From sequence record MZ443783.1: a stretch of 64,000 bases of DNA; one strand, written 5' to 3'. The notes beneath the pieces are model-generated. The model was given only the letters and a program-made list of their open reading frames with translations. It was not told the DNA's origin and ran no database searches. Both the position numbers and the translations under genes were made by a program. Below, piece after piece: positions 7,442-34,690 of this stretch (its first letter is position 1; each line of letters begins with the position of its first letter).

Positions 7442-7777
7442 ATGGGTAATCCACATCGCTATGTGCATACGGCACAGCGCCGCTTCTATGGCAAACACTG
7501 GGTTAGCTTTTGTGATCTGATTCGTGTTGAACCGCAAAAGTACGGCGCATTCAATAGTCAGGATGATATGATCGGTCTGACGCTGCCGAAAGATTTTGAT
7601 GTGGCCGAGGCAACAAAGAGCCTGCGCCAGATTTATGTGACGACTGACGAGAACGTAGAAGTACGCTGCTACCTGTTTGGTACTCGCTACTATAAGTTCG
7701 TATTCTTCGAGCAAACAATTGCCGTGAGCGAGGACACTGATGAGAACGTTAGCAAATATACCCGCCCGAGTGAATGA
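7442..7777 (+). CDS. hypothetical protein (111 aa)
   Basis: AAGGA RBS; divergent from primase. Confidence 0.7.
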   Translation: MGNPHRYVHTAQRRFYGKHWVSFCDLIRVEPQKYGAFNSQDDMIGLTLPKDFDVAEATKSLRQIYVTTDENVEVRCYLFGTRYYKFVFFEQTIAVSEDTDENVSKYTRPSE

Positions 7778-8825
7778 TACTCGCGGCCTGTCTCGCATCG
7801 GAAAAATGATTGATGCGGCTCTTGACGTAAAGAACCAAGAGAAGCGTTGGCCGAAGAAGCGCGTCAGTCCGTCCATGTTTCCTATCTGCCCGATTCAAGA
7901 AACAGCGAAACTGATTTACCAGAAGCACAATAACTGCATGACCGGAGAGTCTGGTACGTTGCTGAACATCTTTGCGAAAGCAGGGACAGGGATGCACGAA
8001 TCATTGCAGAATGCTCTGGGACACAGTGGTCAGATGGTTGGTCACTGGAAATGTACGAATGAAAAATGCGTCGAGTACCCGAAAACCAAAGGCAAGACAG
8101 TCGATGGTGAGTACGTCAAAGGCAAATACACGCGAACTCGAAGCACGAACAATCGTTGTCCGTCGTGCGATCAGCCTATGGCTTATGCAGAACTCAAAGT
8201 CCTGTACAAGTCACTCAAGGGTTACGTCGATGGACTGATTGATAATCTGGACGGCACGTACAGTCTGATAGATTTGAAATCGACTATGGTGACCAAAGCT
8301 GCTGACGGAACCTTCTTCGTTAAGTATCACCGCTTCCAGATCGCGACCTACGCATACCTGCTGAAAAAGCGTTACGGCTATAACATCGTGGACTATACCC
8401 TCGTCTACGTGCCACGCGACAACCCGAAGAAGTTTGTCGAGAAGACCTTTGTGTTTGACGAGGCAGAGTCGAAACGCGCCAAAGACTTTATGATGGAACA
8501 AATACGCGCATGGGATGCTGCGGTAAAATCGGCTCGCACTGGCGACCTGCTGCCTGCTATTAAACGGAAGCCGTGCAAAAGCGCCGAGTATTATTGGGAC
8601 GAGTTCCATGGATATGATACATGCCCTTTTGTTGACTATTGCTTTATTCAATCACACATGATTGACTTCATGAAGAAGTTAGAGCAGCGAATCATGGCCA
8701 ACCCCGATCTTACTTATATGGAAATCGTAAGCACAGGTCGGAAAACTCAACAACAAGGTCTGCTGCCGGACAAGAAGCCAAAGTCTCAACGTCCGAAGCA
8801 TATCGTAAAAACATTTGAGCTATGA
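7770..8825 (+). CDS. PD-(D/E)XK Cas4/RecB-like exonuclease
   Basis: SPS..PICP, GT..H, VDGLID, IDLKS, QIATY motifs and C-terminal C...CPFVDYC; start uncertain (7740/7770/7806). Confidence 0.8.
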   Translation: MNDTRGLSRIGKMIDAALDVKNQEKRWPKKRVSPSMFPICPIQETAKLIYQKHNNCMTGESGTLLNIFAKAGTGMHESLQNALGHSGQMVGHWKCTNEKCVEYPKTKGKTVDGEYVKGKYTRTRSTNNRCPSCDQPMAYAELKVLYKSLKGYVDGLIDNLDGTYSLIDLKSTMVTKAADGTFFVKYHRFQIATYAYLLKKRYGYNIVDYTLVYVPRDNPKKFVEKTFVFDEAESKRAKDFMMEQIRAWDAAVKSARTGDLLPAIKRKPCKSAEYYWDEFHGYDTCPFVDYCFIQSHMIDFMKKLEQRIMANPDLTYMEIVSTGRKTQQQGLLPDKKPKSQRPKHIVKTFEL

Positions 8826-9719: not shown

Positions 9720-10215
9720 CGATCCCGTCGATGTGCCGAAGACGCATGATGCAATGATCGAAGTGCTGATTGCTATTCGGTACATGTGCACCAAGCGCAT
9801 GATCTTCCCTGTCGTGATTGCTAACATTGAACGGCGTAATGATTATCTGGTGATGAACAAACTCACCTTTAGCATGAAGCCTGGTAAATTCCTGACTGCT
9901 ATTCAGGATAGCAACTGCCCTGTAAACGTGTGCTGGCTCATGCGAGCCTTCACACGCACCGCTCTGCATTTCGGTCTGATGCCTGTGATTGCAGACAGAA
10001 GTGGCGACTTTCAACCTTTAGTTAGTCGCTACTTCACGCAGGACGATCCAGATTTTGCTTACCGTCGTCATTACGACATTCGTTACATGAGCCAGCTCAC
10101 TGATATCCGTAAGCCGCGCCTGTATCTGCTTAATGGAGTTAATTATGGCGTACAAGTCACTCGCCAAGAAACCGAAGAAGTCGAAAGCCGCCAAAGAGGC
10201 AGAGACTCGGAATAA
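9700..10215 (+). CDS. hypothetical protein
   Basis: Part of ORF 9508-10215; start estimated at 9700 (uncertain). Confidence 0.6.
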   Translation: MTRTSNSDPVDVPKTHDAMIEVLIAIRYMCTKRMIFPVVIANIERRNDYLVMNKLTFSMKPGKFLTAIQDSNCPVNVCWLMRAFTRTALHFGLMPVIADRSGDFQPLVSRYFTQDDPDFAYRRHYDIRYMSQLTDIRKPRLYLLNGVNYGVQVTRQETEEVESRQRGRDSE

Positions 10216-10801
10216 GGCACACAAGCAAGCGCGTCGTGGTAAACTTGCTCAGGCAGTGAAAACAATCAGCACTGCCCTCAAGAAATCTCGACGCATGACG
10301 AAAGGTGAGAAACGTGCAATTCAGTTGCAGCCGTTCAAACCCCAAGTCGTACCGCAGCCGCCTAAAACTCCGCTCATGGAGAAAGGTCTTTCGTTGAACG
10401 CGCTGATTAAGTCTACGCCGCGTCTGATGAAAGAGAACGCTATGGAATGTTATGTCAATGGCGTGAAGCGCGGCAAGACGAACAAAGGCCTGCCGATGAT
10501 TATGGCAAACGTTCGTCACAAAGATCCACTGCGTCCTAATAAAACAGTGCGCATTCACAAGCCGATGATCATCGGTCTGGATGATCCGTACAAGCCTATT
10601 TCAAAACAAAAGCGTGTGCTGGTCAGTTGTCCCTGCGAGAACTTTGTGTTCATGTGGGAGTATGCGAACACCGAACATGGTTGTGCGCGAATTATTTACG
10701 GTAACGGCGAGCCACCAGACTTCACTAACCCCGGTCACGCACCTGGTCTGTGTAAGCACCTGATGGCCTTAGCTGATCAAGTCAAACGAAACGGAGATTA
10801 A
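10145..10801 (+). CDS. SWIM zinc-finger protein with basic N-terminus
   Basis: VSCPCENF...GLCKHL (CxC-xn-CxH); GGAG RBS before ATG 10145. Confidence 0.75.
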   Translation: MAYKSLAKKPKKSKAAKEAETRNKAHKQARRGKLAQAVKTISTALKKSRRMTKGEKRAIQLQPFKPQVVPQPPKTPLMEKGLSLNALIKSTPRLMKENAMECYVNGVKRGKTNKGLPMIMANVRHKDPLRPNKTVRIHKPMIIGLDDPYKPISKQKRVLVSCPCENFVFMWEYANTEHGCARIIYGNGEPPDFTNPGHAPGLCKHLMALADQVKRNGD

Positions 10802-10806
10802 TCCGA

Positions 10807-11088
10807 ATGTTCTTTAACAATCCGGCACCAGGCGTTATCCCTAACTATCCGATTGTGCATTCAATCAATGAGATGCACCGTCGTGTGGCTGAACTCAACG
10901 GCGAACTGATCGCTGCTGGCTGCACTGTCGTAGAGTCGTGCGGCGAGATGCTGATCGAGGTCCCTAAGGGCGCATCTGCGAAAGTTGACGATATCATCCA
11001 ACGTCATCAGGATATGTTCAAAGGTCCTGTCCTCAGCCGCCCTGGTCGCTTGCAGATTGGAGGCGAAGATGCAGAAGCAGAAGTTTAA
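10807..11088 (+). CDS. hypothetical protein (93 aa)
   Basis: ORF in operon. Confidence 0.65.
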   Translation: MFFNNPAPGVIPNYPIVHSINEMHRRVAELNGELIAAGCTVVESCGEMLIEVPKGASAKVDDIIQRHQDMFKGPVLSRPGRLQIGGEDAEAEV

Positions 11089-11500
11089 CCCAGCGATCAA
11101 TAGCGTGTCGCTTCACTACGGACCGCTCATTGTTCACGGCCATGCGCAAGATAGCGCATTGAATAACGTTGTGCACCGCACGTTGCTGAACGAACTCAAT
11201 CGCACCTGCGAAGATATGTTCAACAAGATGGCATGTGTCCCTGCTGCCGCTCCGACTTTTGAGTGTGAAGTCACTGACGGTAACACCATTCTCCAATCGC
11301 TCAAACAGTGGCAGGCAGTCATCGAAGGGCAGGCGCCTGCGAAAGAGTTTGAACCGTGCTCTATTCCAGACTGGATGCGTCCGAGTCTTTTGGCTAAGGG
11401 CATGACTGACGCGGAGATCGATAGCATCCTTATCACTGGTATCGAACCTTCGTGGGATGAAACGCCTGGCGTTGTCTTCCGTACGGTGACCATTCCTTAA
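11069..11500 (+). CDS. hypothetical protein
   Basis: GGAGG RBS before ATG 11069. Confidence 0.7.
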   Translation: MQKQKFNPAINSVSLHYGPLIVHGHAQDSALNNVVHRTLLNELNRTCEDMFNKMACVPAAAPTFECEVTDGNTILQSLKQWQAVIEGQAPAKEFEPCSIPDWMRPSLLAKGMTDAEIDSILITGIEPSWDETPGVVFRTVTIP

Positions 11501-11715
11501 TGGCCTGTTCGGGTTGTGGCCGTCGTAGCTCTCGCATTAGTTACAACGGCAGTTCTGCTCCTCAGACAGTAATCGAAGAGGACGATACGTTAAGCGCTGC
11601 GCGTTTAACACCTCATGGCTGGGTACGCACCTGCGTTAAGTGTGGTGCCGTTTCCGAGCCTTCACCCTTTGCAGAAAACATTGAAAAACCTTGTGACTGC
11701 AAAACAGACGAGTGA
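11500..11715 (+). CDS. small Cys-rich protein (71 aa)
   Basis: MACSGCG...CVKCG...CDC; TAATG coupling. Confidence 0.7.
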   Translation: MACSGCGRRSSRISYNGSSAPQTVIEEDDTLSAARLTPHGWVRTCVKCGAVSEPSPFAENIEKPCDCKTDE

Positions 11716-12938
11716 TCAAGATGAGCAATCTCGTTGGTACTGCTGTAGCTTTGGACCATTGTCGCTTCTACGTGGAGAACATGGTCAACATTCAATTCGG
11801 TAATGTTCTCGCTCCTGTTCCACCAGAAGTTCCGTACAACAAGCCGATCAACAGTCGTGTGCTGCATGGTATGATCAAACATACCGAACTCATGTTCGAC
11901 AACTTCATTAGTCGCACTGACCTGCAATTCCCATACGCGCCGATTCTGTATCGTTTCCGTTCTATCTACGGCGTGTATGTTGGTCAATACGCCGATGACG
12001 TGCAGCCTGTTCGCGGCATCCGTCCTGTGTTGAAAGAACACCCGCGCAATCCTGTTCCTGTCAAAGCAGGCGGTGAGCCAGACAAAGAGTTTGCTTCGCG
12101 CTTCCTCAAGCATACGTCTGAACAGGTACGTTCGTTCCTGTACATGGTGTGTCTCGATCAGTATGCGCGTGAGCAGACAGACGTATGGCTGCCTGCGCCT
12201 CCGTTTGACTTCGACCAGCCGACGAACATTCATAACGAAAGCCCGATCGCGTTTACGACTACGCATGACGTTTTGGTCAATCACTTGATGGAAGCGATGT
12301 TGCAGACGTATAGCGATACTCTGGACATTCATGTGTCGCTGCGTGACTACGGTCTGACTGTGTTGTTCCCGCTGGTGGCTGAATGCCGCAACGTGATTTA
12401 TGCCGCTTGGCCGATTACGCGCGAATCATTCCGCACTCCTAAGTTTCTGGACGGCGGTGAGCACGTAGCGTTTGAAGATCTACCTGTTGATGACGACAAA
12501 GAGGTGTGGGAACCAATCCCGCCAATGGGACCTACGTTCGAAAATCAGGCGGAGTGGGAAAAGGCTGTGACTGAAATTGCAGAGTCGTTCAAGCTGCAAG
12601 CATTCACGGATGACGGTGATTCATCGTTTATCCTCAAGCCCGCTCTGTATGCTAGTGGTGATGACTTCCTGTTCTGGAACGAAGGTCCACTGACTGACAA
12701 GTCCATTTTCGATATCGCGGTCGTTCCTGTTGTAGGTAAGTCCTACACTGATCTCGAAGTGCTGTTGCGTAGCGTCGGCAAAACCATTCGTGAATACGCA
12801 GTAGCTCGTGAGTGTCACATCGTCGCCCGCTACATCGAACAGGAAGACCAAATCATCGGTGCACTGTTCCGTGTTCGTCGTAACATCGACTTCCCTAATT
12901 CGCCGCAAGAAGTAATGACTCACGTGGGGTTAGCATGA
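11712..12938 (+). CDS. hypothetical protein (408 aa)
   Basis: Long ORF; C-terminal domain paralogous to 12935-13468. Confidence 0.8.
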   Translation: MIKMSNLVGTAVALDHCRFYVENMVNIQFGNVLAPVPPEVPYNKPINSRVLHGMIKHTELMFDNFISRTDLQFPYAPILYRFRSIYGVYVGQYADDVQPVRGIRPVLKEHPRNPVPVKAGGEPDKEFASRFLKHTSEQVRSFLYMVCLDQYAREQTDVWLPAPPFDFDQPTNIHNESPIAFTTTHDVLVNHLMEAMLQTYSDTLDIHVSLRDYGLTVLFPLVAECRNVIYAAWPITRESFRTPKFLDGGEHVAFEDLPVDDDKEVWEPIPPMGPTFENQAEWEKAVTEIAESFKLQAFTDDGDSSFILKPALYASGDDFLFWNEGPLTDKSIFDIAVVPVVGKSYTDLEVLLRSVGKTIREYAVARECHIVARYIEQEDQIIGALFRVRRNIDFPNSPQEVMTHVGLA

Positions 12939-13468
12939 CAGATCAAGTAATCACATTCGAAGACCAGCAAAGCTGGGAAGACTTCGGTGAAGCTGTTCAC
13001 AATGAGTTTTTGCTGAACACGATGACAGGTAGCAGTAGCGCCAGTCAGATCCCGAGTGTTGGTCCTAACGAAGGCGTGAAACATGCGCTGACCTATGCCA
13101 ACATTCTTCGTGGTGAGCAGTCGCCTATCGTTGTGCTCGATTTGCTGATCGAAGAAGTTGCTTTGGCTGAGGGCGAGACTAGTCCTTTCGATGCTGATGG
13201 TCTTGAGCAGGCCGTGCGTAAAGTAGTGGCGTTGTATCAAGCGCGAGCGCGTGACCTCGACTGTCATATCACTGGTCAGTACCTGACAGATGATAACAAG
13301 GTCATCGGCGCATTGCTGCGTGTGTATCGCAATCAGGACTTCCCGTGTACTGGGCATCCTGAAATGCTGCACGGTAAACCAATCGGTATGTTCCACTGCG
13401 ATAAGTGTCATGAGATGCAAGTCGCTGGTACGTTCCATCTTCCCAAAGAGGAAACTCAAAATGGTTAA
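12935..13468 (+). CDS. hypothetical protein (177 aa)
   Basis: ATGA coupling; C-terminal CDKC. Confidence 0.8.
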   Translation: MTDQVITFEDQQSWEDFGEAVHNEFLLNTMTGSSSASQIPSVGPNEGVKHALTYANILRGEQSPIVVLDLLIEEVALAEGETSPFDADGLEQAVRKVVALYQARARDLDCHITGQYLTDDNKVIGALLRVYRNQDFPCTGHPEMLHGKPIGMFHCDKCHEMQVAGTFHLPKEETQNG

Positions 13469-13928
13469 AGGTGGGTTGTGGCGTGTCTTCCCTGACTATG
13501 ACTCGGAAGCATTGCTGATGAAGCTCGGTGCCGCTATCGGTATCGAGCACGACGAAGACGATGTGCCTGGCGAATTGCACGTTACTCTGGCCTACGACGA
13601 ATCGAACCCTGACGTCAAAGCCGAGCAGAACGATGCGGGCGAGTTCTTCGCTACCGTCAAATGTGCCGAGTTGTTTGGCGAAGGTCAAGATAAGATTCTG
13701 GTACTCGTACTCGAATCACCTGACCTGTGTGCAGAACATGATCGCATTCACGCATGTGGTGCGGCTAAGTGGTCACATAATCAGTACCTCCCTCACGTCA
13801 CGCTGTTGAAGTCTGCCAAAGACAGCCAAGCTGAACATCTCAATCAGATCATTCAGCACCCAGGCCGTCCTCCAATCACTCTGCGCTTCATTGAAGAAGA
13901 TCGCAAGGTGCTGGAGAAGCGTAACTAA
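13461..13928 (+). CDS. 2H phosphoesterase, T4 gp57B/Acb1-like (candidate anti-CBASS nuclease)
   Basis: Two HxT motifs (LHVTLAY, PHVTLLK) and a LVLVLES..L...H segment as in Acb1; GAGG RBS before ATG 13461. Confidence 0.8.
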   Translation: MVKGGLWRVFPDYDSEALLMKLGAAIGIEHDEDDVPGELHVTLAYDESNPDVKAEQNDAGEFFATVKCAELFGEGQDKILVLVLESPDLCAEHDRIHACGAAKWSHNQYLPHVTLLKSAKDSQAEHLNQIIQHPGRPPITLRFIEEDRKVLEKRN

Positions 13929-13933
13929 ATCCT

Positions 13934-13959
13934 AGCGGTGGCCATGTGCTGCCGCTTTT
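13934..13959 (+). terminator. intrinsic terminator
   Basis: AGCGGTGGC-CATGT-GCTGCCGCT-TTT. Confidence 0.65.
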
Positions 13960-13979
13960 GTCGTTCTGGAGATATTTCT

Positions 13980-14309
13980 ATGGAAATGATGGTAAGTCTT
14001 AGCCACGAAATTCGCGTGGAGAAACAGGACAACACTGCGAACGAAGCGCAGACTCAAGGTCCTACTGACGCGCAGCAACGCGCTCTTGATCTCGAAGACC
14101 AGCGCCGCATTGCGGAAGAATACGGTATCGACGCTCCCAAGGAAGAGATTGAAGAAAAGGAGAAGGAACGTATCGAGCGTGAGAAAGAAAAAGAAGAGGA
14201 GAATCGCGTTAGACCACCAGCAGACCTTGGGCAGCGCAAGCCTATCGAAGACAAAGATGTTACCGCTACAGATATCCAAAATGAGCACGATAACCTGACG
14301 AAGATCTAG
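13980..14309 (+). CDS. hypothetical charged protein
   Basis: GGAG RBS before ATG 13980; E/K/R-rich helix. Confidence 0.7.
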   Translation: MEMMVSLSHEIRVEKQDNTANEAQTQGPTDAQQRALDLEDQRRIAEEYGIDAPKEEIEEKEKERIEREKEKEEENRVRPPADLGQRKPIEDKDVTATDIQNEHDNLTKI

Positions 14310-14310
14310 G

Positions 14311-14321
14311 AATCTGTAAAT
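14311..14321 (+). promoter_or_regulatory. AATCTGTAAAT motif upstream of the sigma factor gene
   Basis: Exact motif about 34 nt before ATG 14355. Confidence 0.55.
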
Positions 14322-14354
14322 AAGAGTCAAAGCAACTAACAGGTGTATTTGACC

Positions 14355-15392
14355 ATGAACAATAAGTCGAATCTCACGGGCGGTCAGATAGAAAGCGTCA
14401 TGGACACCATGTTGCATGACTGCCTCCGTGAGATTGTTGAGAACACGGATATCTTCGATATCCAATTGACCTACTTGTTGGGTCTGGTTACGTCAAATAA
14501 AAAGCGAAAGCCATACAACGCAGAAACGCGTGAACGAGCTATCAGCCTTCTGATTAAAGCGCTCTCTGTACCGCGTGACCAGAAGATGGTTTTCATTCAG
14601 GAACTTAAAATGGAGCGTAACTTCATTTATGTCTTCCTGGAAAATGTAATTAAGCGGTACTACTCGGTGTATGTCGATTTGTACCGTGCATTCATCACGA
14701 CGCAAGATCCAATCAAGCGCGTGGCGTATTCAAAACGACTGGATGTGTATGTGAAGATGTTTGGTGCTGAGTCTCGCTCCAAGCTGTTTGTGGCGTTGTG
14801 TCGTTTGAATGACCTACTGCCGCAGTTCATGGAATACTTCCACTCGGTAGTTGCTGACTTCTATCGTCTGTGCAGCAAGCAGACCAAATTCTATGTTGAT
14901 ACCAATCGTGGTAAACTCTACGACAGCAAAGACGTGCGCCAGAACTTCCTGCGTAACGTTATCATTGCAATCAACAAGTATGACTCATCGCGTGGTGCGA
15001 TAGTCAGTTATACGAAGTGGTGGATTCTGAACGCTCAAACCTGTAGTAGCAGCGAGCACGAATACGGCATCGCCTACACTATTCCCCAGACTCAACGTAA
15101 GAAACTGGCGACAGGTGAAGATACCACTTCTCTGAATTTCTCGGTAAGTCTCGATACTCCAGCCAATGAATCTGATGAAGGTGCGGACGCGTCCCTACAT
15201 CAAAAGGTGAGTGACCATCATCACCTGGAAGATCACGTTGATAGTGAAAGACGTACCGAAAAACTGAGACTGCTTATCAAGCGCGTTGACCCTCTCGGTG
15301 TTGCTCGACTAACGATGGACGTTGGCGAGGAGTTCGATAAGTTTGAACTCGACCTCATGCGTAAACATATGCAAGCTCAAGGGCTAGCCTAA
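14355..15392 (+). CDS. phage RNA polymerase sigma factor (sigma70 family, region 4 apparently degenerate)
   Basis: Region 2-like DVRQNFLRNVIIAINKYDSSRGAIVSYTKWWILNA and region 3-like SLDTP; no recognisable 4.2 HTH. Confidence 0.75.
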   Translation: MNNKSNLTGGQIESVMDTMLHDCLREIVENTDIFDIQLTYLLGLVTSNKKRKPYNAETRERAISLLIKALSVPRDQKMVFIQELKMERNFIYVFLENVIKRYYSVYVDLYRAFITTQDPIKRVAYSKRLDVYVKMFGAESRSKLFVALCRLNDLLPQFMEYFHSVVADFYRLCSKQTKFYVDTNRGKLYDSKDVRQNFLRNVIIAINKYDSSRGAIVSYTKWWILNAQTCSSSEHEYGIAYTIPQTQRKKLATGEDTTSLNFSVSLDTPANESDEGADASLHQKVSDHHHLEDHVDSERRTEKLRLLIKRVDPLGVARLTMDVGEEFDKFELDLMRKHMQAQGLA

Positions 15393-15402
15393 AACTGTAA
15401 AC
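15392..15402 (+). promoter_or_regulatory. AAACTGTAAAC motif upstream of the SSB gene
   Basis: Variant of the CTGTAAAY motif, about 40 nt before ATG 15442. Confidence 0.5.
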
Positions 15403-15441
15403 AGTGCATATCATAGCACAACTCAATATTGAGGAAATATA

Positions 15442-16701
15442 ATGGCACGTGGATTTGGTGACATTCAGGACAACAGCAAACGTGATAGTCTGCGTGAGTC
15501 CGAAATCTTTGAAATCTTCCCGCTCTCAAAGAAAGCAAACGGCAACTGGGTATCAATCCGCCTGTTAGATCTCGACCTGCTTCCTATCAAGAAGCACTGG
15601 ATCAAGATCATGGGCGGCAAAGACAAAGATAAAGAAATCAAAATCCCGCGCATGTGCGTTAACTTCGATCCGGATAATCAGAACAAACCTCTGAACGGTA
15701 TGAAGTGTCCGTACTGCGGTATTGCACACGGCAACGACGAATCTGGTGCGCCAGCGCAGTACGACTACAAGTGGTATGCGCAAGCGATCATCCGTGACGA
15801 GCAGGCCGCTGCGCCGCGTAAAATGCCGAAGCTCTCTAAGAAAGAGCAGAAGACCGGCAAGAAAGAAATGGGCAGCGAAGCATGGACTCCAGTTCAGTGT
15901 ATTCCGCTGTCTAACTCTCTGGCGCAGAAAATCAAAGAGCTGGGCGAGCGTAACATTCATACCGTGAAAGATAAAAAATCCGGTAAGAAGTCTAAGCAAG
16001 CGTTCCAGGTCAACCATCCGAAGTATGGCTGCGATATTGAAATCAAATACAACGCCAAGAAATCTCCGGCCGAGCGTTACACAATCGAACGTGGTGACCA
16101 TACGCCACTGACCAGCGATGAAAAAGAATATCTGACCTGGGACTTCGACAACTGGCCAGAAATCTACGACATGCTCGGTCGTCTGAACGAAGAAGCCGCT
16201 ATGGCTGACTTCAAAAAGATGGACGTTATCGGCGTTAACACCAACGACTCTGACGATGGTGACGACGATGAAGATGACGACGACATGGCGCTGGGCCGCA
16301 AGAAGAAAGGCGGCAAGGCAGACAAGAAAAAACGTCGCAGCGATGACGATGACGATGACGACGATGACGAAGACGAAGATGAAGATGATCGTCGTAAGTC
16401 TAAAAAGTCCAAGCCGACCAAGTCTCGCAAAATGCTGGACGACGATGAGGATGACGACGACGAAGACGAAGATGAAGATGATCGTCCGTCGAAGTCGAAG
16501 AAGTCTAAGGACAAAAAGTCCAAGTCTTCTAAAAAGTCCAAGCGTTCCAGCGACGATGACGACGACGAAGACGACAAGCCTGCGAAGAAGAAAAAGAAAT
16601 CTTCTGACAAGGTGAAATCATCCGATAAGAAGAAAAAGAAAAAGTCTTCTGATGACGATGACGACGACGCGCCGAAGAAGAAAAAGAAAAAGAAAAAGTA
16701 A
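15442..16701 (+). CDS. putative single-stranded DNA-binding protein (gp32-like) with a long D/K tail
   Basis: Lies directly before recA; aromatic-rich N-domain with CPYC; C-terminal ~150 aa of alternating poly-D and poly-K blocks. Confidence 0.6.
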   Translation: MARGFGDIQDNSKRDSLRESEIFEIFPLSKKANGNWVSIRLLDLDLLPIKKHWIKIMGGKDKDKEIKIPRMCVNFDPDNQNKPLNGMKCPYCGIAHGNDESGAPAQYDYKWYAQAIIRDEQAAAPRKMPKLSKKEQKTGKKEMGSEAWTPVQCIPLSNSLAQKIKELGERNIHTVKDKKSGKKSKQAFQVNHPKYGCDIEIKYNAKKSPAERYTIERGDHTPLTSDEKEYLTWDFDNWPEIYDMLGRLNEEAAMADFKKMDVIGVNTNDSDDGDDDEDDDDMALGRKKKGGKADKKKRRSDDDDDDDDDEDEDEDDRRKSKKSKPTKSRKMLDDDEDDDDEDEDEDDRPSKSKKSKDKKSKSSKKSKRSSDDDDDEDDKPAKKKKKSSDKVKSSDKKKKKKSSDDDDDDAPKKKKKKKK

Positions 16702-16711
16702 TTCGCAACAC

Positions 16712-16740
16712 GGGGTAGCTTAGGCTGCCCCTTCTTTTCT
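16712..16740 (+). terminator. intrinsic terminator
   Basis: GGGGTAGC-TTAG-GCTGCCCC-TTCTTTT. Confidence 0.8.
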
Positions 16741-16759
16741 CAATCTGGACTATCCCACA

Positions 16760-19291
16760 ATGGCGAAAACGAACAACAAGGCTGAGAAGAAGGCCGAGAA
16801 GAAAGCTAAAGTCAAAGCTCTGAAAAGCGGAGAAAAGGCAGTAGCTTCTGATGATATCGGCGGCGTTGAAATTCAAGGCTTCGACCTCGCAAGTTTGATG
16901 GACGATGTGCTTGACGGCATCGAAAAGAAAACGAAAGTAAGTTCGCAGGATGCAGCGCGACACGCACCGCGTATCTCAACAGGCTGTCTGGCGCTTGACA
17001 TGTATTTGTCTGGCGGTATCGTACCTGGCGGTTGGTACACATTCAGCGGCGGTGAGCAGTCATGTAAGTCAACAATGACCATGAGCATTATGGCGAGCCT
17101 GATTCGTCTGAAATACTCTGGCATTAGCGTAGTGTTCGACTACGAAGGTTCAACCGATGCCGAGTACGTTGCTGGTCAGTTGAAAACGTTCGGCGTTAAG
17201 GTCGACCCGAAAACTATCTTCGGTGTGCGTGACGATAAAGACGGTAGCTGGATCGTTAAGCCTAAGATCCGTTACTACGCACCAGACAACGGTGAGCGCT
17301 TCTTCGATTATATGTCGATGCTGCGTCGTCGTCTGCCTGACAAAATCGTTGAGAAAGACGGCACCGCGTATTACATCTTTGAGAACAACAAAGAGAACGC
17401 GAAGAAGCTGGCAGGCAAGTACGATAAGAAATGGTTCAGCCGTAACAACCAGTTCAAAGTACCTGCGCCAGACGGCCACATGCAGGCGATGGTTATCGTT
17501 GACTCCTATCCTGCGATGATGCCAGATCAGGTCGATGACGATGACGGCTCGAAAGCAATGGCGTTGCAAGCGCGTATGTTCTCTGACGGCATCAAACGTT
17601 TCCGTGGTGGTATGCGTCGTAAGATGATGACCATCGTGGGCGTTAACCAGTTGCGTCAGAAGCCTGCTGTGATGTTCGGTAGCCCTGAGTACGAGCCTGG
17701 TGGTGACGCGTTGAAGTTCTACTGCTTCGACCGTGACACTCTGATTCGTACTGACCACGGCGTATTGACTGCACCGCAGATTAAAGCGCTGATGGACGAA
17801 GGCAAAGAAGTTGCCGTTGAGTCGTTCGATGGTTATCAGAAAATCAACGGCGCATGGCTTGTCAATGACGCTCCGTTCCCGTTCGAACTGAATGCTGGTG
17901 GTCATGTGTATGTTGGCTCGGCCGAACATCGCCAGTTCACGTTCATGCACGATCTGACTGCCGAAGGTACTCCAGTTCTGCGTCCTGAATGGAACACGCT
18001 GAATCAACTGGCGCAGTACCCAGAGCAGAAAGGTCAGTACGCTGGTCTGCGTGTACCACCAGTTAAGGAACTGAAAGAGAATGTTCCTGACGCCTTCGAT
18101 GAAGCCTCACAACTGGTAAGCAATCTGCTTGGAAACTGCGACCCTGTTAGCAAGCAACTGCCGCTGGTGACTCACGGTGATACCACCTACGCTGCAAACT
18201 GTCTGTTCATCGACACTGTGGGCGAAGACACCGACACTGGTTCGTTCTCGTTCTGGGTAGAGAAGTTACTGGCCATCGGCGTATTTGCTTACGCTGACGA
18301 AAGCGGTATCTGGATTCCAGGTCTGAACAAACACGAACTGGAAGCGGCTGTAGCGCAGGACGAACTCGGTGCGTTTGCTGGTATCAGTTTTGAAGCGACC
18401 TGTCGTCAACGTCAGACTCAAATGCTGACCGTGATTGTCGATCACTTCCCTGAGCTGGTACGTTACGTTCTGGACTATCAGTTGCAGACGGGCAAAGACA
18501 AAATCTATCTGGCGCCTGAGAACGACTTCGCACAAGCGCTTGACCTGATTCTGCACAAAGAGATCGCTGGTTACGACGACTACTATGACCTGCTGATGTT
18601 CCAGCTGGCGTATGTCGATGACTGGTACAACTTCGATTCCTCAATTCTGCCTGTGCCGTTTACGCTTCGTGCGCTCAACGAACAGCGTGAGTTCTGGGAC
18701 GTGAACGTTGAAGAAACGTCGGTAGTAATCACCAACGGCTTCGTCAGTCACAACAGCGACGTGCGTGTGCGACTGGCTTCTCGTGCGGTACCAGAAGGCT
18801 GGCCGAAACTGAAAGATGCTCCTGGCATCGTCGGTGAGAAGTCGGTAACAGTTGAAGGAGGTACTGACCGCTATCGCTTCATCGCTGCTAAGACCATCAA
18901 GAACAAGATGGGCGGCATCCCTAACCAGCAGACGTGGTTACGTTTGTGGGAAGCTGACGGTAACGGTGAAGCTCGCGGTTTCGACCCAGTGTTCGATACG
19001 TGGCACTACCTGAAAACTCTGGGTCTGGTCAATGGTAGCCGTAAGTCGTTCAAGCTGAAAGCTCCGTGCCCGCTCGCATCTGATGTTAAGATGGATTGGG
19101 ATGACTTCCGTACACTCATCAACGGCAGCAAAGAACAAGTTGTTGGCGTGTGTAAGAAACTGAAAGTCAAACCTGCGGGCCTGCGTCTGTGGTGCTTCAA
19201 GTTCGTTCAGTCCACTAAGGGCAACGAAATGTTGAAGAACGCAATCAGTAAGTCTGCCAAGAAGTCTGATGACGACGACGGCGACGAGTAA
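16760..19291 (+). CDS. recA: RecA/UvsX recombinase precursor containing an intein
   Basis: ISTG..ALD..L.GG, Walker A variant GGEQSCKST, IVDS, LQARMFS, NQLRQK..VMFGSPE..PGG.ALKFY, KNK. Confidence 0.92.
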   Translation: MAKTNNKAEKKAEKKAKVKALKSGEKAVASDDIGGVEIQGFDLASLMDDVLDGIEKKTKVSSQDAARHAPRISTGCLALDMYLSGGIVPGGWYTFSGGEQSCKSTMTMSIMASLIRLKYSGISVVFDYEGSTDAEYVAGQLKTFGVKVDPKTIFGVRDDKDGSWIVKPKIRYYAPDNGERFFDYMSMLRRRLPDKIVEKDGTAYYIFENNKENAKKLAGKYDKKWFSRNNQFKVPAPDGHMQAMVIVDSYPAMMPDQVDDDDGSKAMALQARMFSDGIKRFRGGMRRKMMTIVGVNQLRQKPAVMFGSPEYEPGGDALKFYCFDRDTLIRTDHGVLTAPQIKALMDEGKEVAVESFDGYQKINGAWLVNDAPFPFELNAGGHVYVGSAEHRQFTFMHDLTAEGTPVLRPEWNTLNQLAQYPEQKGQYAGLRVPPVKELKENVPDAFDEASQLVSNLLGNCDPVSKQLPLVTHGDTTYAANCLFIDTVGEDTDTGSFSFWVEKLLAIGVFAYADESGIWIPGLNKHELEAAVAQDELGAFAGISFEATCRQRQTQMLTVIVDHFPELVRYVLDYQLQTGKDKIYLAPENDFAQALDLILHKEIAGYDDYYDLLMFQLAYVDDWYNFDSSILPVPFTLRALNEQREFWDVNVEETSVVITNGFVSHNSDVRVRLASRAVPEGWPKLKDAPGIVGEKSVTVEGGTDRYRFIAAKTIKNKMGGIPNQQTWLRLWEADGNGEARGFDPVFDTWHYLKTLGLVNGSRKSFKLKAPCPLASDVKMDWDDFRTLINGSKEQVVGVCKKLKVKPAGLRLWCFKFVQSTKGNEMLKNAISKSAKKSDDDDGDE
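17723..18754 (+). mobile_element. intein (344 aa) in RecA
   Basis: Starts CFDRDTLI after ALKFY, has a block-B-like GSAEHRQF, ends GFVSHN followed by Ser; excision restores ALKFY-SDVRVRL. Confidence 0.92.
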
Positions 19292-33103: not shown

Positions 33104-34164
33104 ATAAGACCGTTGGCCTGATGATTGATGAAGACGTAATGAACTGGCTGGACATGCTGCTTGCGGGTGAACTGAGCAATGTCTTAGGTGCGTTGAACAA
33201 TATCGTGTACGCCCGCCGGCAGGAACTGTCTGTCGAACGTCTGACCGAAGACGAAGATATTGGTGCGCTCTCTCATAAAGAGCTGGAGATCATTCTGCGT
33301 TACGCTGCTCCTAATCATGAGTACGATACGACGGTGCTGTCGAATGAACAACTGCTTCGTCTGGCGATGGATGCACAGGGCATCATCTCCTACACATTGC
33401 CGAGTCATAGTTCGCCTATCATGGTTAAACGTGCTTTCGCTAACGGCAACGTGTGCTCACTGCTTGGCAGTTTTTCGAATCGTGCTGATATCGTCATGGC
33501 TGTACATCACTGGGAATGTGGTCTGTCCAACATCTCGCTCGACGGTGTGACTGGTAACGACGAACGCCCAGACGAACAAGGCATGTACCTGTGCTACGAT
33601 GAGCACAAGCAAGTTCGTTATGGCCGACTGTTCAAGAATGCCAACGACGGCTGGACATTCAGCGAGTATTATTCTGCTGGTGGATCTACTACGTGGCTTG
33701 AAGCGAGTCCAAACAATGCGCTTGATGGTGACGACCTGCCGATCAGCCTGCTGACTAACTGGGTATTCGTTGTTCCAGATCGTTCGCCGTCTATTCTCAA
33801 ACCTGCTGAGGGATTCAAGCGTCTGTCCGACACACAACGCATCTTCCTGTATCTGCGTAGCCTGAGTCCTCACGTTAAAGCTGAGATCGTCGCACACTTC
33901 GACGGCGTTCTGGACAATCGATCATTCACCTCTGTCGATCAGATTGGTCGCCTGACTGAAAAAGACTGGCGCGATGCTGCGATTGCTATCGGTGAAGAAG
34001 AAAGTGGCCAAGAAGGTCCTCACTACTGGGATGATCGTAGTGCGTGGGCTTGCTTCGTCGCTGTGCTCAACTCTCTGTGCTTCGACATGGACACACGCGA
34101 CTTCCAACCGCAGTATGAGTACCAGGCCAACGACGACACTATGGAAGAAGACAACAATGGCTAA
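33100..34164 (+). CDS. hypothetical protein (354 aa)
   Basis: GGAG RBS; long ORF. Confidence 0.8.
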   Translation: MNKTVGLMIDEDVMNWLDMLLAGELSNVLGALNNIVYARRQELSVERLTEDEDIGALSHKELEIILRYAAPNHEYDTTVLSNEQLLRLAMDAQGIISYTLPSHSSPIMVKRAFANGNVCSLLGSFSNRADIVMAVHHWECGLSNISLDGVTGNDERPDEQGMYLCYDEHKQVRYGRLFKNANDGWTFSEYYSAGGSTTWLEASPNNALDGDDLPISLLTNWVFVVPDRSPSILKPAEGFKRLSDTQRIFLYLRSLSPHVKAEIVAHFDGVLDNRSFTSVDQIGRLTEKDWRDAAIAIGEEESGQEGPHYWDDRSAWACFVAVLNSLCFDMDTRDFQPQYEYQANDDTMEEDNNG

Positions 34165-34690
34165 ATCACTCGGCGTATACATGACTTACATTCTGCGTCA
34201 CAAGCCGCAGGATATCGGAATCGCAATGGACACCCAGGGTTGGGTGTCTGTTCTGGACTTCTTGCAGAAAGCAAAGTATGTCAAACAGGTCACTCTCGAA
34301 ATGCTGATTGCAGAAGTTGAGGCGGACGAGAAAGGCCGTTTCGAGTTCAACTCTAACCGCTCCAAGATTCGTTGTGTGCAAGGCCATTCGGTTGAGAACG
34401 TTATTCTGCATCTTGAACCGTTCACTGACCTTGCGCCTTTGTATCACGGTACGGCAGATAAGAACGTGGCATCAATCATGCACGAAGGTATCACGAAGCG
34501 GAAACGCAAACACGTCCACATCAGCCGTGAAATCGAAACAGCCGAGAACGTTGGTCGTCGTCACGGTGCACCTGTTGTGTTTCAGATTGATACACAGGCA
34601 ATGATCACTCACGGCTATAAGTTTTACCGAGCCGAGAATGGAGTCATCCTGACCGATCACGTACCGTCCAGATATATCAAGTTGGTGTGA
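34157..34690 (+). CDS. kptA: RNA 2'-phosphotransferase (Tpt1/KptA family)
   Basis: YILRH, DTQGWV, RFE, IRCVQGHS, LYHGT, RKHVHIS, GRRHG, NGVILTDHVP. Confidence 0.93.
   Translation: MAKSLGVYMTYILRHKPQDIGIAMDTQGWVSVLDFLQKAKYVKQVTLEMLIAEVEADEKGRFEFNSNRSKIRCVQGHSVENVILHLEPFTDLAPLYHGTADKNVASIMHEGITKRKRKHVHISREIETAENVGRRHGAPVVFQIDTQAMITHGYKFYRAENGVILTDHVPSRYIKLV

What the first reader, a model, noticed from the sequence alone, without database searches (positions are those of the whole stretch)
13461..13928. Acb1-like 2H phosphoesterase: candidate anti-CBASS nuclease in the core region
Seen: a 155-aa single-domain protein with LHVTLAY and PHVTLLK motifs and a GL(W)...KILVLVLESPDLCAEH...ACGA...YLPHVTL layout. 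Established: T4 gp57B (Acb1) is a 2H phosphodiesterase that cleaves CBASS cyclic di- and trinucleotides. As I recall it, its GLY...IHSTICY...VLVLVLDSEYL...ALGA...YTPHITL layout matches closely. Inference: an immune-evasion nuclease; a divergent substrate range is possible.
Basis: partly seen in the sequence, partly recalled or inferred. Interest (0 to 1): 0.72.

Follow-up and report, generated by a model that had tools for sequence, protein, structure and literature searches.

The report
Lid-less Acb1-family phosphodiesterase, jumbo phage
The gene is a real, conserved member of the phage Acb1 family of small enzymes that cut bacterial cyclic-nucleotide alarm signals; databases already name its close relatives this way, so it is largely ordinary, though it lacks the flexible lid seen in both studied forms.

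Summary
Window 13461-13928 (+) encodes a 155-aa protein with two H-x-T motifs (H40/T42, H112/T114). The window is Erwinia phage pEa_SNUABM_28, a 267-kb jumbo phage of genus Alexandravirus.

The Acb1 reading is supported:
- Pfam Acb1 scores 49 bits (cut-off 27), while the LigT/ThpR models fall below their cut-offs.
- The only solved structures found by sequence are Acb1-type.
- A confident AlphaFold model (pLDDT 90) matches Burkholderia phage BCSR5 phosphodiesterase (PDE-9) and phage FBB1 Acb1 best, well ahead of plant CPDase, Usb1 and E. coli LigT.

UniProt already names close homologues "Anti-CBASS protein Acb1", and a 2026 survey found acb1 in 61 of 227 Erwinia phages. This is a new member of a known kind.

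What differs is the anatomy. It has neither the C-terminal tryptophan lid of T4/FBB1 Acb1 nor the N-terminal lid of PDE-9. Two base-contact positions are changed in its clade (T4 Y12 to L6, T4 E141 to K149).

The gene is syntenic across five jumbo-phage lineages, is under purifying selection, and ends an operon at a conserved terminator hairpin. Its substrate range is untested. CBASS is reported as rare in E. amylovora.

The parts
13461..13928 (+). acb1-like gene: a 155-aa single-domain 2H phosphodiesterase (stop codon included). It corresponds to MZ443783.1 199461-199928.
   Evidence: ORF and translation. Pfam PF23474 49 bits. PHROG 755. AF2 model with pLDDT 90.2. Foldseek top hits 9q2y/9q2g/7t27/7t26. 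Genome identity.
13578..13586 (+). First catalytic H-x-T motif (H40, V41, T42).
   Evidence: Translation. H40 and T42 are invariant in the 56-sequence alignment A2. They align with T4-numbering H44/T46.
13794..13802 (+). Second catalytic H-x-T motif (H112, V113, T114).
   Evidence: Translation. H112 is invariant in A2. The motif aligns with T4-numbering H113/T115.
13445..13454 (+). Shine-Dalgarno-like stretch (GAGG core at 13448-13451) ahead of the ATG at 13461.
   Evidence: Read from the sequence. The same stretch precedes the start in SNUABM_22 and Y3.
13934..13966 (+). Terminator-like hairpin (9-bp stem with 6 G-C pairs, then a T-rich tail) 6 nt after the stop codon. It marks the end of the transcription unit.
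   Evidence: Pattern scan. A hairpin plus T-run sits at the same place after the stop in Y3, Yoloswag and fHe-Yen9-02, with different stem letters. The overall number of terminator-like sites in the region is no higher than in shuffles, so the support comes from conserved position, not from the scan.
11721..13468 (+). Two upstream genes of unknown function (11721-12938 and 12935-13468), translationally coupled to each other and to acb1 by overlaps of 4 and 8 nt. They are paralogues of each other.
   Evidence: ORFs and annotation of relatives. BLASTP 31% identity over 143 aa, E 5e-13. No Pfam family. PHROG 29033, unknown function, for the second gene only.

Best explanation
The gene encodes a small Acb1-family 2H phosphodiesterase of a jumbo Erwinia phage.

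By analogy with the studied members (inference), its two histidines, H40 and H112, each held in an H-x-T motif, act as general acid and base. No metal is needed. The 2'-OH of a nucleotide in a cyclic di- or trinucleotide attacks its own 3'-5' phosphodiester. The ring opens through a 2',3'-cyclic phosphate intermediate to a linear product that no longer activates the host's effector protein. Made from an operon in the replication and recombination gene block, it would drain CBASS-type alarm signals so the infected cell does not kill itself before the phage completes its cycle.

Shown here: family membership, the fold, intact catalytic residues, conservation, synteny and operon structure.

Inferred: the chemistry, the substrates and the counter-defence role.

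The form is unusual. It is a bare core, without the C-terminal tryptophan lid of T4/FBB1 Acb1 or the N-terminal lid of BCSR5 PDE-9. Two base-contact positions are changed. Its substrate preference probably differs from that of T4 Acb1.
For: - **Family models.** Pfam Acb1 scores 49 bits against a cut-off of 27, E 6.7e-13. All 56 aligned relatives hit Pfam Acb1.
- **Solved structures by sequence.** Only Acb1-type chains come back: 7t26, 9q2g and 9q2y. With the family profile the E-values are 4.5e-6 and 2.8e-5.
- **Structure model.** pLDDT 90.2, pTM 0.85.
- **Foldseek against PDB.** Ranks 1-5 are BCSR5 PDE and FBB1 Acb1 (E 2.7e-9 to 7.6e-7, TM 0.64-0.78). E. coli LigT comes at E 1.4e-3 and TM about 0.5.
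- **Foldseek against BFVD.** The top hits are phage proteins that UniProt names Anti-CBASS protein Acb1, led by Dickeya phage JA29 at TM 0.87-0.90.
- **Catalytic residues.** The tetrad is intact and invariant.
- **Selection and synteny.** Purifying selection and synteny across five jumbo-phage lineages.
- **Existing names.** UniRef names the 88%-identical pEa_SNUABM_2 protein Acb1.
- **Published activity of relatives.** T4 Acb1 and nine further homologues cleave 3'3'-cGAMP and cAAA (PMC9117128). BCSR5 PDE-9 cleaves 3'3'-cGAMP (bioRxiv 10.1101/2025.08.21.671373).
Against: - No activity was measured for this protein or for any member of its jumbo-phage clade. None of the 16 enzymes purified by Doherty et al. 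comes from this clade.
- The protein lacks both known lid types. T4 Acb1 without its lid no longer triggered Panoptes, which the authors read as the lid being needed for catalysis. PDE-9 without its lid kept 3'3'-cGAMP cleavage but lost most activity on its poorer substrate.
- Base-contact positions differ. T4 Y12 aligns with L6 in the family alignment, or with W7 in a pairwise BLASTP. T4 E141 aligns with K149. T4 W147 has no counterpart.
- CBASS_I appears only among the low-prevalence systems in 317 E. amylovora genomes (PMC13480210). Constant selection by CBASS in the known host is therefore not evident.
- The same genome carries a Tpt1/KptA gene, which keeps RNA- or Appr>p-related roles open.
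Confidence: 0.65

Rival explanations
1. It is a member of the Acb1 family, but its natural target is not a CBASS signal. The bare core and changed base-contact residues would suit another small phosphodiester-linked messenger. Candidates are cyclic tri-adenylate from type III CRISPR, a non-adenine cyclic dinucleotide, or a housekeeping cyclic dinucleotide. Alternatively, they narrow the range so that decoy signals such as 2'3'-c-di-AMP (Panoptes) are spared.
For: Doherty et al. found that viral 2H PDE groups differ sharply in substrate range, that the core rather than the lid sets the preference, and that two groups cleaved nothing in an 18-compound panel. In the window's clade T4 E141, the adenine N6 contact, is K149 and T4 Y12 is L6, while the sister clade keeps Y and E. 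CBASS is rare in E. amylovora.
Against: PDE-9 also lacks the E141 equivalent and still cleaves 3'3'-cGAMP well, so this residue is not decisive. All ten Acb1 homologues tested by Hobbs et al. cleaved 3'3'-cGAMP and cAAA. The L6-versus-W7 register is unresolved.
Confidence: 0.17
2. It is an RNA 2',3'-cyclic phosphodiesterase (LigT/ThpR-like) that heals cleaved RNA ends, for example tRNAs cut by host anticodon nucleases, as part of an RNA-repair route that also uses the phage's Tpt1.
For: It has a 2H fold with two H-x-T motifs, as in LigT/ThpR. RefSeq and PHROG label the family 'RNA ligase', and some records say 'cyclic phosphodiesterase'. There is a weak sub-threshold hit to TIGR02258. Tpt1/KptA lies at window 34157-34690 (152 bits) and is present across the same jumbo-phage clade.
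Against: All LigT/ThpR models are below their cut-offs. LigT structures rank far below the Acb1 types. No RNA ligase or polynucleotide kinase is annotated anywhere in the relative NC_061441.1, which is 99.2% identical to the window over 11500-16800. Tpt1 is 20 kb away in another gene block. Phage Tpt1 genes elsewhere are not next to 2H or ligase genes.
Confidence: 0.09
3. It hydrolyses ADP-ribose 1''-2'' cyclic phosphate (Appr>p), the by-product of the Tpt1 reaction, as plant and yeast CPDases do.
For: The Arabidopsis Appr>p cyclic phosphodiesterase (1fsi, 1jh6) is the next structural match after the Acb1 types (E 1e-5, TM 0.58-0.64). The phage encodes a Tpt1, and both genes are core to the clade.
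Against: The match to the plant CPDase is clearly weaker than to the Acb1 types, and no sequence model supports it. The two genes are not linked (20 kb apart). T4-type phages carry Acb1 with no Tpt1 hit among the 98 phage records. Co-occurrence inside one monophyletic phage group is not independent evidence.
Confidence: 0.05

Closest known systems
2H PDE-9 of Burkholderia phage BCSR5 (PDB 9Q2G/9Q2Y; QRE00328.1 in MW460245.1; Doherty et al. 2025 preprint)
   Same: It is the best structural match (E 2.7e-9, TM 0.78). BLASTP identity is 30% over 145 aa, covering nearly the whole core. Both are about 160-aa single-domain proteins of jumbo phages with both H-x-T motifs. Both have His at the T4 F107 position and lack the T4 E141 glutamate and the C-terminal tryptophan lid.
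   Different: PDE-9 carries an N-terminal lid of about 15 residues that folds over the active site. The window protein has only 3 residues before its first strand. PDE-9 has Tyr at the T4 Y12 column and Trp at the W74 column; the window protein has L6 (with W7 next to it) and F72.
Acb1 of phages T4 (gp57B) and FBB1 (PDB 7T26/7T27; Hobbs et al. 2022)
   Same: Same Pfam family (PF23474). It is the best PDB match by sequence and ranks 4-5 by fold. The H-x-T/H-x-T tetrad is the same, an aromatic residue sits at the W74 column (F72), and the size is similar.
   Different: There is no C-terminal lid and no W147 equivalent: the tail after K149 is 6 residues with no aromatic. E141 is replaced by K149 and Y12 by L6 in the family alignment. 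An extra helix (121-131) lies between the second H-x-T and the last strand, where the T4-type proteins are shorter. The gene context also differs: a replication and recombination block rather than the T4 gene 1 / 57A / ipI neighbourhood.
Sister-clade homologues in Yoloswagvirus, Salmondvirus and Yersinia phage fHe-Yen9-02 (UniProt 'Anti-CBASS protein Acb1', e.g. Dickeya phage JA29)
   Same: Same syntenic slot, 38-47% identity, and BFVD TM 0.87-0.90. They share the invariant G-G-x-W-x-V-x-P stretch at the N-terminus.
   Different: The sister clade keeps Tyr at the Y12 column and Glu at the E141 column. Some members have an N-terminal extension of 11-16 residues resembling the PDE-9 lid.
LigT/ThpR RNA 2',3'-cyclic phosphodiesterases (E. 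coli LigT 5LDM, TIGR02258)
   Same: Same 2H superfamily, two H-x-T/S motifs, metal-independent chemistry.
   Different: The scores are below all curated cut-offs. TM is about 0.5 with rmsd 7-8 Å. The window protein is about 20-30 residues shorter.

Membership tests
Acb1 (Pfam PF23474; T4 gp57B / FBB1 type) | Score above the curated family threshold | tested here: met
   49 bits against a cut-off of 27, E 6.7e-13, covering aa 36-129. All 56 relatives in A2 also hit the model.
Acb1 (Pfam PF23474; T4 gp57B / FBB1 type) | Catalytic H-x-T / H-x-T tetrad (T4 H44, T46, H113, T115) | tested here: met
   H40, T42, H112 and T114 align with the tetrad. H40, T42 and H112 are invariant in A2.
Acb1 (Pfam PF23474; T4 gp57B / FBB1 type) | Compact 2H fold whose nearest solved structures are Acb1-type enzymes | tested here: met
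   AF2 pLDDT 90.2. Foldseek ranks 1-5 are 9q2y, 9q2g, 7t27 and 7t26.
Acb1 (Pfam PF23474; T4 gp57B / FBB1 type) | Aromatic residues stacking on the bases (T4 Y12, W74, F107, W147) | tested here: inconclusive
   W74 aligns with F72, so the aromatic is kept. F107 aligns with H106, with W104 two residues earlier. Y12 aligns with L6 in the 72-sequence alignment but with W7 in a pairwise BLASTP against PDE-9. W147 has no counterpart. Model coordinates are not exposed, so geometry could not be checked.
Acb1 (Pfam PF23474; T4 gp57B / FBB1 type) | C-terminal lid (T4 residues 145-152) that closes over the ligand | tested here: not met
   Only 6 residues follow K149, with no aromatic, and the last strand runs to residue 151. 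In the sample of 72 relatives only 6 have a Trp in the tail, so this feature defines the T4-type subgroup rather than the Pfam family.
Acb1 (Pfam PF23474; T4 gp57B / FBB1 type) | Glutamate contacting adenine N6 (T4 E141) | tested here: not met
   It is K149 in the window and in 12 of 13 close homologues. It is Glu in the sister clade and Thr in PDE-9.
Acb1 (Pfam PF23474; T4 gp57B / FBB1 type) | [quoted passage not shown] | not testable with these tools
   Known for T4 Acb1 and nine homologues (PMC9117128) and for PDE-9. No member of this jumbo-phage clade is among the tested enzymes.
PDE-9 type (BCSR5, N-terminal-lid Acb1 relatives) | N-terminal lid of about 15 residues ahead of the first strand | tested here: not met
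   Three residues precede the G-G motif. The Shine-Dalgarno stretch and start codon are conserved. The JA33 homologue has only 8 open codons upstream.
LigT/ThpR RNA 2',3'-cyclic phosphodiesterase | Score above the curated thresholds (TIGR02258, PF02834, PF13563) | tested here: not met
   21.7 against 65.7, 16.4 against 23.3, and 22.6 against 27.
LigT/ThpR RNA 2',3'-cyclic phosphodiesterase | RNA-repair partners (RNA ligase, polynucleotide kinase) in the genome | tested here: not met
   None is annotated in the whole of NC_061441.1, which is 99.2% identical to the window over 11500-16800; the only 'RNA ligase' label is the 2H gene itself. This is weak evidence, because most genes there are 'hypothetical'.
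Appr>p cyclic phosphodiesterase (plant/yeast CPDase, partner of Tpt1) | Closest structural relatives are CPDases, and the gene is linked to Tpt1 | tested here: inconclusive
   1fsi and 1jh6 rank 6-7 (TM 0.58-0.64), behind the Acb1 types. Tpt1 is in the same genome but 20 kb away.

The most novel reading that the evidence does not exclude
The Alexandravirus/Sasquatchvirus enzyme is a naturally lid-less Acb1 core. Its clade-specific changes at two base-contact positions (Tyr to Leu, Glu to Lys) would have re-tuned its substrate range. It might take a non-adenine or otherwise different messenger, or spare decoy signals such as 2'3'-c-di-AMP. That would explain why it stays a conserved core gene in phages whose usual host rarely carries CBASS.
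Probability: 0.2. Interest if true: 0.6.

Novelty: new member of a known kind. Interest (0 to 1): 0.3.

Why it matters
It corrects a misleading label. RefSeq calls this gene family 'RNA ligase', and GenBank calls the window's gene 'hypothetical'. It places an Acb1-family enzyme as a syntenic core gene of a whole group of jumbo phages that infect plant-associated Enterobacterales.

A 2026 review still lists Tad1 as the only anti-defence protein described in jumbo phages (PMC13282480). A conserved Acb1 relative in this group, beside the PDE-9 of BCSR5, therefore adds to a thin record.

The lid-less anatomy bears on an open question from Doherty et al. They asked how far the core alone, without a lid, sets activity and specificity. 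Here nature offers a lid-free example, with a sister clade that keeps the canonical residues and, in part, an N-terminal extension.

Beyond that the finding is ordinary. The family, the fold and the likely chemistry are all known.

Tried and rejected
- **Upstream operon partner (12935-13468).** Its homologues are restricted to the clade. The AF2 model is moderate (pLDDT 73.5). Foldseek against PDB gave no match with E <= 0.001. Function is still unknown.
- **The two neighbours and the small downstream gene.** No Pfam or NCBIfam family; only PHROG families of unknown function.
- **PADLOC.** No hit for the 2H protein.
- **Antisense ORFs and the upstream in-frame extension.** No PHROG hit for 13305-13688 (-), 13935-14465 (-) or 13290-13460 (+). 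I treat them as shadow ORFs.
- **Rfam, window 10000-18000.** Nothing at gathering score. No tRNA in the window.
- **Link between Tpt1 and 2H genes.** I looked at Tpt1 neighbourhoods in three unrelated phages (phiCD211, Afa-NA1, Special G). None has a 2H or RNA ligase gene nearby.
- **Literature on these phages.** Day et al. 2018 do not mention the phosphodiesterase, an RNA ligase or the phosphotransferase. The supplements of Hobbs et al. held here do not list Erwinia jumbo phages. The supplements of PMC13480210 are not held, so I could not confirm that pEa_SNUABM_28 is among its 61 acb1-positive phages.
- **Promoter scan.** Fewer sigma-70-like sites than in shuffles (3 against 9.3), so nothing usable.
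- **Tool errors.** Three paper look-ups failed on a term that was too short.
- **Residue geometry.** I could not tell whether L6 or W7 faces the pocket, or where K149 points, because model coordinates are not returned.
Full report
**1. The observation**

Window 13461-13928 (+) is an open reading frame of 155 codons plus a stop.
- GLW at residues 5-7
- LHVTLAY at 39-45
- KILVLVLESPDLCAEH at 78-93
- ACGA at 98-101
- YLPHVTL at 109-115
- PHVTLLK at 111-117

The frame stays open for 58 codons upstream, but that stretch overlaps the preceding gene in another frame. It is not conserved between the window and phage Y3 and matches no PHROG family. The ATG at 13461 is preceded by a GAGG Shine-Dalgarno stretch that Y3 also keeps, and it overlaps the upstream stop by 8 nt. 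The Dickeya phage JA33 homologue has only 8 open codons upstream of its start. The short N-terminus is therefore real.

**2. Where the window comes from**

Megablast places the window in Erwinia phage pEa_SNUABM_28 (MZ443783.1, 267,143 bp; 100% identity). Window base 1 corresponds to about record base 186,001, and the gene is record 199461-199928. This is a jumbo phage of genus Alexandravirus that infects Erwinia amylovora. GenBank calls the gene 'hypothetical protein'. RefSeq records of sister phages call it 'RNA ligase', which is the PHROG 755 label. Some Dickeya and Erwinia phage records say 'putative cyclic phosphodiesterase'.

**3. What family it belongs to**

*By sequence models.* Pfam Acb1 (PF23474) scores 49 bits against a gathering cut-off of 27 (E 6.7e-13). 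The general 2H models stay below their cut-offs: 2_5_RNA_ligase2 at 22.6 (cut-off 27) and LigT_PEase at 16.4 (cut-off 23.3). The NCBIfam equivalog for ThpR/LigT (TIGR02258) scores 21.7 against 65.7.

*By sequence against solved structures.* Only Acb1-type chains come back: FBB1 Acb1 (7t26/7t27) and 9q2g/9q2y. With a profile of 17 close relatives the E-values improve to 4.5e-6 and 2.8e-5.

*By exhaustive search.* A search of 1.84 billion representative proteins found only 66 relatives at E <= 0.001. All 56 single-domain ones that I aligned match Pfam Acb1.

*By fold.* An AlphaFold2 model built on that alignment is confident (mean pLDDT 90.2, pTM 0.85). It has six strands and three helices. Foldseek against the PDB ranks as follows:

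| Rank | Match | E-value | TM |
|---|---|---|---|
| 1-3 | Burkholderia phage BCSR5 phosphodiesterase (9q2y, 9q2g) | 2.7e-9 (best) | 0.78 |
| 4-5 | FBB1 Acb1 | 4e-7 | 0.64-0.76 |
| 6-7 | Arabidopsis Appr>p phosphodiesterase | 1e-5 | 0.58-0.64 |
| 9 and below | Usb1 | 9e-5 and weaker | about 0.5 |
| 18 and below | Penguinpox cGAMP phosphodiesterase | 7e-4 | about 0.55 |
| 21 and below | E. coli LigT | 1.4e-3 | about 0.5 |

Against predicted viral structures, the top hits are phage proteins that UniProt already names 'Anti-CBASS protein Acb1', led by Dickeya phage JA29 (TM 0.87-0.90). UniRef gives the same name to the 88%-identical protein of pEa_SNUABM_2.

**4. Anatomy compared with the studied enzymes**

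Hobbs et al. (PMC9117128) describe these features of Acb1:
- an H-x-T/H-x-T tetrad (T4 numbering H44, T46, H113, T115)
- four aromatic residues that stack on the bases (Y12, W74, F107, W147)
- a glutamate (E141) that reads adenine N6
- a C-terminal lid (residues 145-152)

Doherty et al. (bioRxiv 10.1101/2025.08.21.671373) solved '2H PDE-9'. Their supplement and the PDB titles identify it as BCSR5 QRE00328.1 (9Q2G/9Q2Y). They showed that its lid is N-terminal (residues 1-15), that the core sets substrate preference, and that PDE-9 spares 2'3'-c-di-AMP and so does not trigger Panoptes.

As comparators I fetched three natural sequences:
- a Tequatrovirus Acb1 orthologue in the conserved gene-1 / 57A / 57B slot (L004)
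- a Roskildevirus one that aligns over 142 residues to chain 7t26 (E 3e-76; L003)
- the BCSR5 gene (L014)

I aligned them with 72-75 family members. The mapping is:

| T4 feature | Window protein |
|---|---|
| Tetrad H44/T46/H113/T115 | H40/T42/H112/T114, all kept |
| W74 | F72 |
| F107 | H106, with W104 two residues before |
| Y12 | L6 in the family alignment; a pairwise BLASTP with PDE-9 instead pairs its Tyr with W7 |
| E141 | K149 |
| W147 | No counterpart; six non-aromatic residues follow K149 |

W7 is invariant in the jumbo clade. Before the first strand there are three residues, against about 13-15 in PDE-9. The protein is therefore a bare core with neither lid.

The Leu and Lys states are specific to the Alexandravirus/Sasquatchvirus clade (12 of 13 close homologues have K149). 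The sister clade (Yoloswag, JA phages, fHe-Yen9-02 and metagenomic relatives) keeps Tyr and Glu. Some sister-clade members have an N-terminal extension of 11-16 residues.

Two cautions apply. PDE-9 itself lacks the E141 glutamate and still cleaves 3'3'-cGAMP. And only 6 of the 72 sampled relatives have a Trp in the C-terminal tail. These two features therefore mark the T4-type subgroup rather than the whole family.

**5. Context**

The gene is the last of three translationally coupled genes (11721-12938, 12935-13468, 13461-13928), with overlaps of 4 and 8 nt. The first two are paralogues of each other (31% identity over 143 aa, E 5e-13) with no known family or fold.

Six bases after the stop lies a hairpin with a 9-bp stem and a T-rich tail (13934-13956). 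A hairpin plus T-run sits at the same place in Y3, Yoloswag and fHe-Yen9-02, with different stem letters. This suggests a real terminator.

Downstream follow a small unknown gene, a sigma-factor-like gene (PHROG 17569), an SSB (PHROG 15004) and an 843-aa RecA/UvsX-like gene. This order is kept in five phage lineages. The gene evolves under purifying selection: dN/dS is 0.20-0.23 against close relatives and 0.06 against Y3, with dS saturated.

**6. Rival readings**

*RNA-end healing.* This reading draws on the 'RNA ligase' label and on a Tpt1/KptA gene at 34157-34690 (Pfam 152 bits) that is present across the same clade. Against it:
- The LigT/ThpR models fail their cut-offs.
- No RNA ligase or polynucleotide kinase is annotated anywhere in the relative NC_061441.1, which is 99.2% identical to the window over 11500-16800.
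- Tpt1 lies 20 kb away.
- Tpt1 genes of three unrelated phages have no 2H or ligase neighbour.

*Appr>p processing.* This related idea, hydrolysis of the Tpt1 by-product, draws on the Arabidopsis CPDase being the next structural match. That match is clearly weaker than the Acb1 types.

*A different target within the Acb1 family.* This is the more serious rival: the enzyme is an Acb1-family member whose natural target differs from canonical CBASS signals. The missing lids, the changed contact residues and the low prevalence of CBASS in 317 E. amylovora genomes (PMC13480210) all leave room for it.

**7. Comparison with what is known, and novelty**

The family, fold and likely chemistry are established. 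UniProt names close homologues Acb1. A 2026 DefenseFinder survey reports acb1 as the commonest anti-defence gene in Erwinia phages, in 61 of 227 genomes. I could not confirm from the held text that this phage is among the 61.

I therefore file it as a new member of a known kind. The modest new points are:
- the bare-core anatomy
- the clade-specific Leu and Lys states
- its status as a syntenic core gene in a group of jumbo phages

A 2026 review still names Tad1 as the only described jumbo-phage anti-defence protein.

**8. Verdict**

My confidence that this is an Acb1-family 2H phosphodiesterase with intact catalytic residues is about 0.9. My confidence that its role is to cut cyclic-oligonucleotide immune signals of the CBASS kind is about 0.65. 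Interest is 0.3.

No genes in the region are broken. I built no repaired, consensus or ancestral sequence. All comparator sequences came from tool outputs or from accessions shown by a paper.

Noticed in passing
window 34157-34690 (+): A Tpt1/KptA-family RNA 2'-phosphotransferase (Pfam PF01885, 152 bits; below the NCBIfam equivalog cut-offs). It is present across the same jumbo-phage clade and also in Agricanvirus, large Klebsiella/Serratia phages, C. difficile phages and Bacillus phage G (98 phage records in all). Its role in phages is unknown.
   Followed up: partly
window 35517-37043 (+): A 508-aa radical SAM protein (Pfam Radical_SAM 52 bits, Fer4_12). It has only weak, generic matches to prokaryotic viperin models in PADLOC (E 1.6e-11) and to QueE-like and RNR-activase PHROGs. 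It lies close to the Tpt1 gene.
   Followed up: no
window 7740-8825 (+): A 361-aa PD-(D/E)XK nuclease with Cas4-like matches (Pfam PDDEXK_1; PADLOC Cas4 E 1.8e-8; PHROG 1706 'CRISPR/Cas system associated'). It is probably a recombination exonuclease rather than a CRISPR component.
   Followed up: no
window 15442-16701 (+): The SSB-like protein (PHROG 15004) ends in a low-complexity tail of about 150 residues, made of alternating runs of Asp/Glu and Lys/Ser. That is unusually long for an SSB tail.
   Followed up: no
window 11721-12938 and 12935-13468 (+): The two genes co-transcribed with the 2H gene are paralogues (31% identity over 143 aa). The second has an invariant Cys/His cluster near its C-terminus (C138, H141, H154, C155, C158, H168 in alignment A3), which may bind metal. 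It has no family, and no structural match at E <= 0.001.
   Followed up: yes
outside the window: PDB 8hds_A residues 499-593; P0062 residues 632-722; BFVD entries of 883-1134 aa: The Acb1-like 2H domain also occurs fused to large virion proteins. Examples are the C-terminus of the Pam3 portal protein (profile E 0.0057), a 740-aa representative, and Gordonia phage structural proteins. This hints that some phages carry the domain in the particle.
   Followed up: no
L006 (Erwinia phage Yoloswag) 3462-3950: An in-frame ATG 18 nt upstream of the annotated start would give this homologue an N-terminal extension. The extension resembles those of metagenomic sister-clade proteins and the N-terminal lid region of BCSR5 PDE-9, so the annotated start may be too short.
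   Followed up: partly
NC_061441.1 133713-134795 (outside the window): The sister phage is annotated with a 'DHH phosphoesterase' in its replication gene block. It is probably RecJ-like, but DHH enzymes can also degrade small nucleotide messengers.
   Followed up: no
window 1-64000: No tRNA or tmRNA gene was found in the whole 64-kb window. Nearly all genes from about 7400 onward lie on the + strand, in tightly packed and often overlapping arrays.
   Followed up: no
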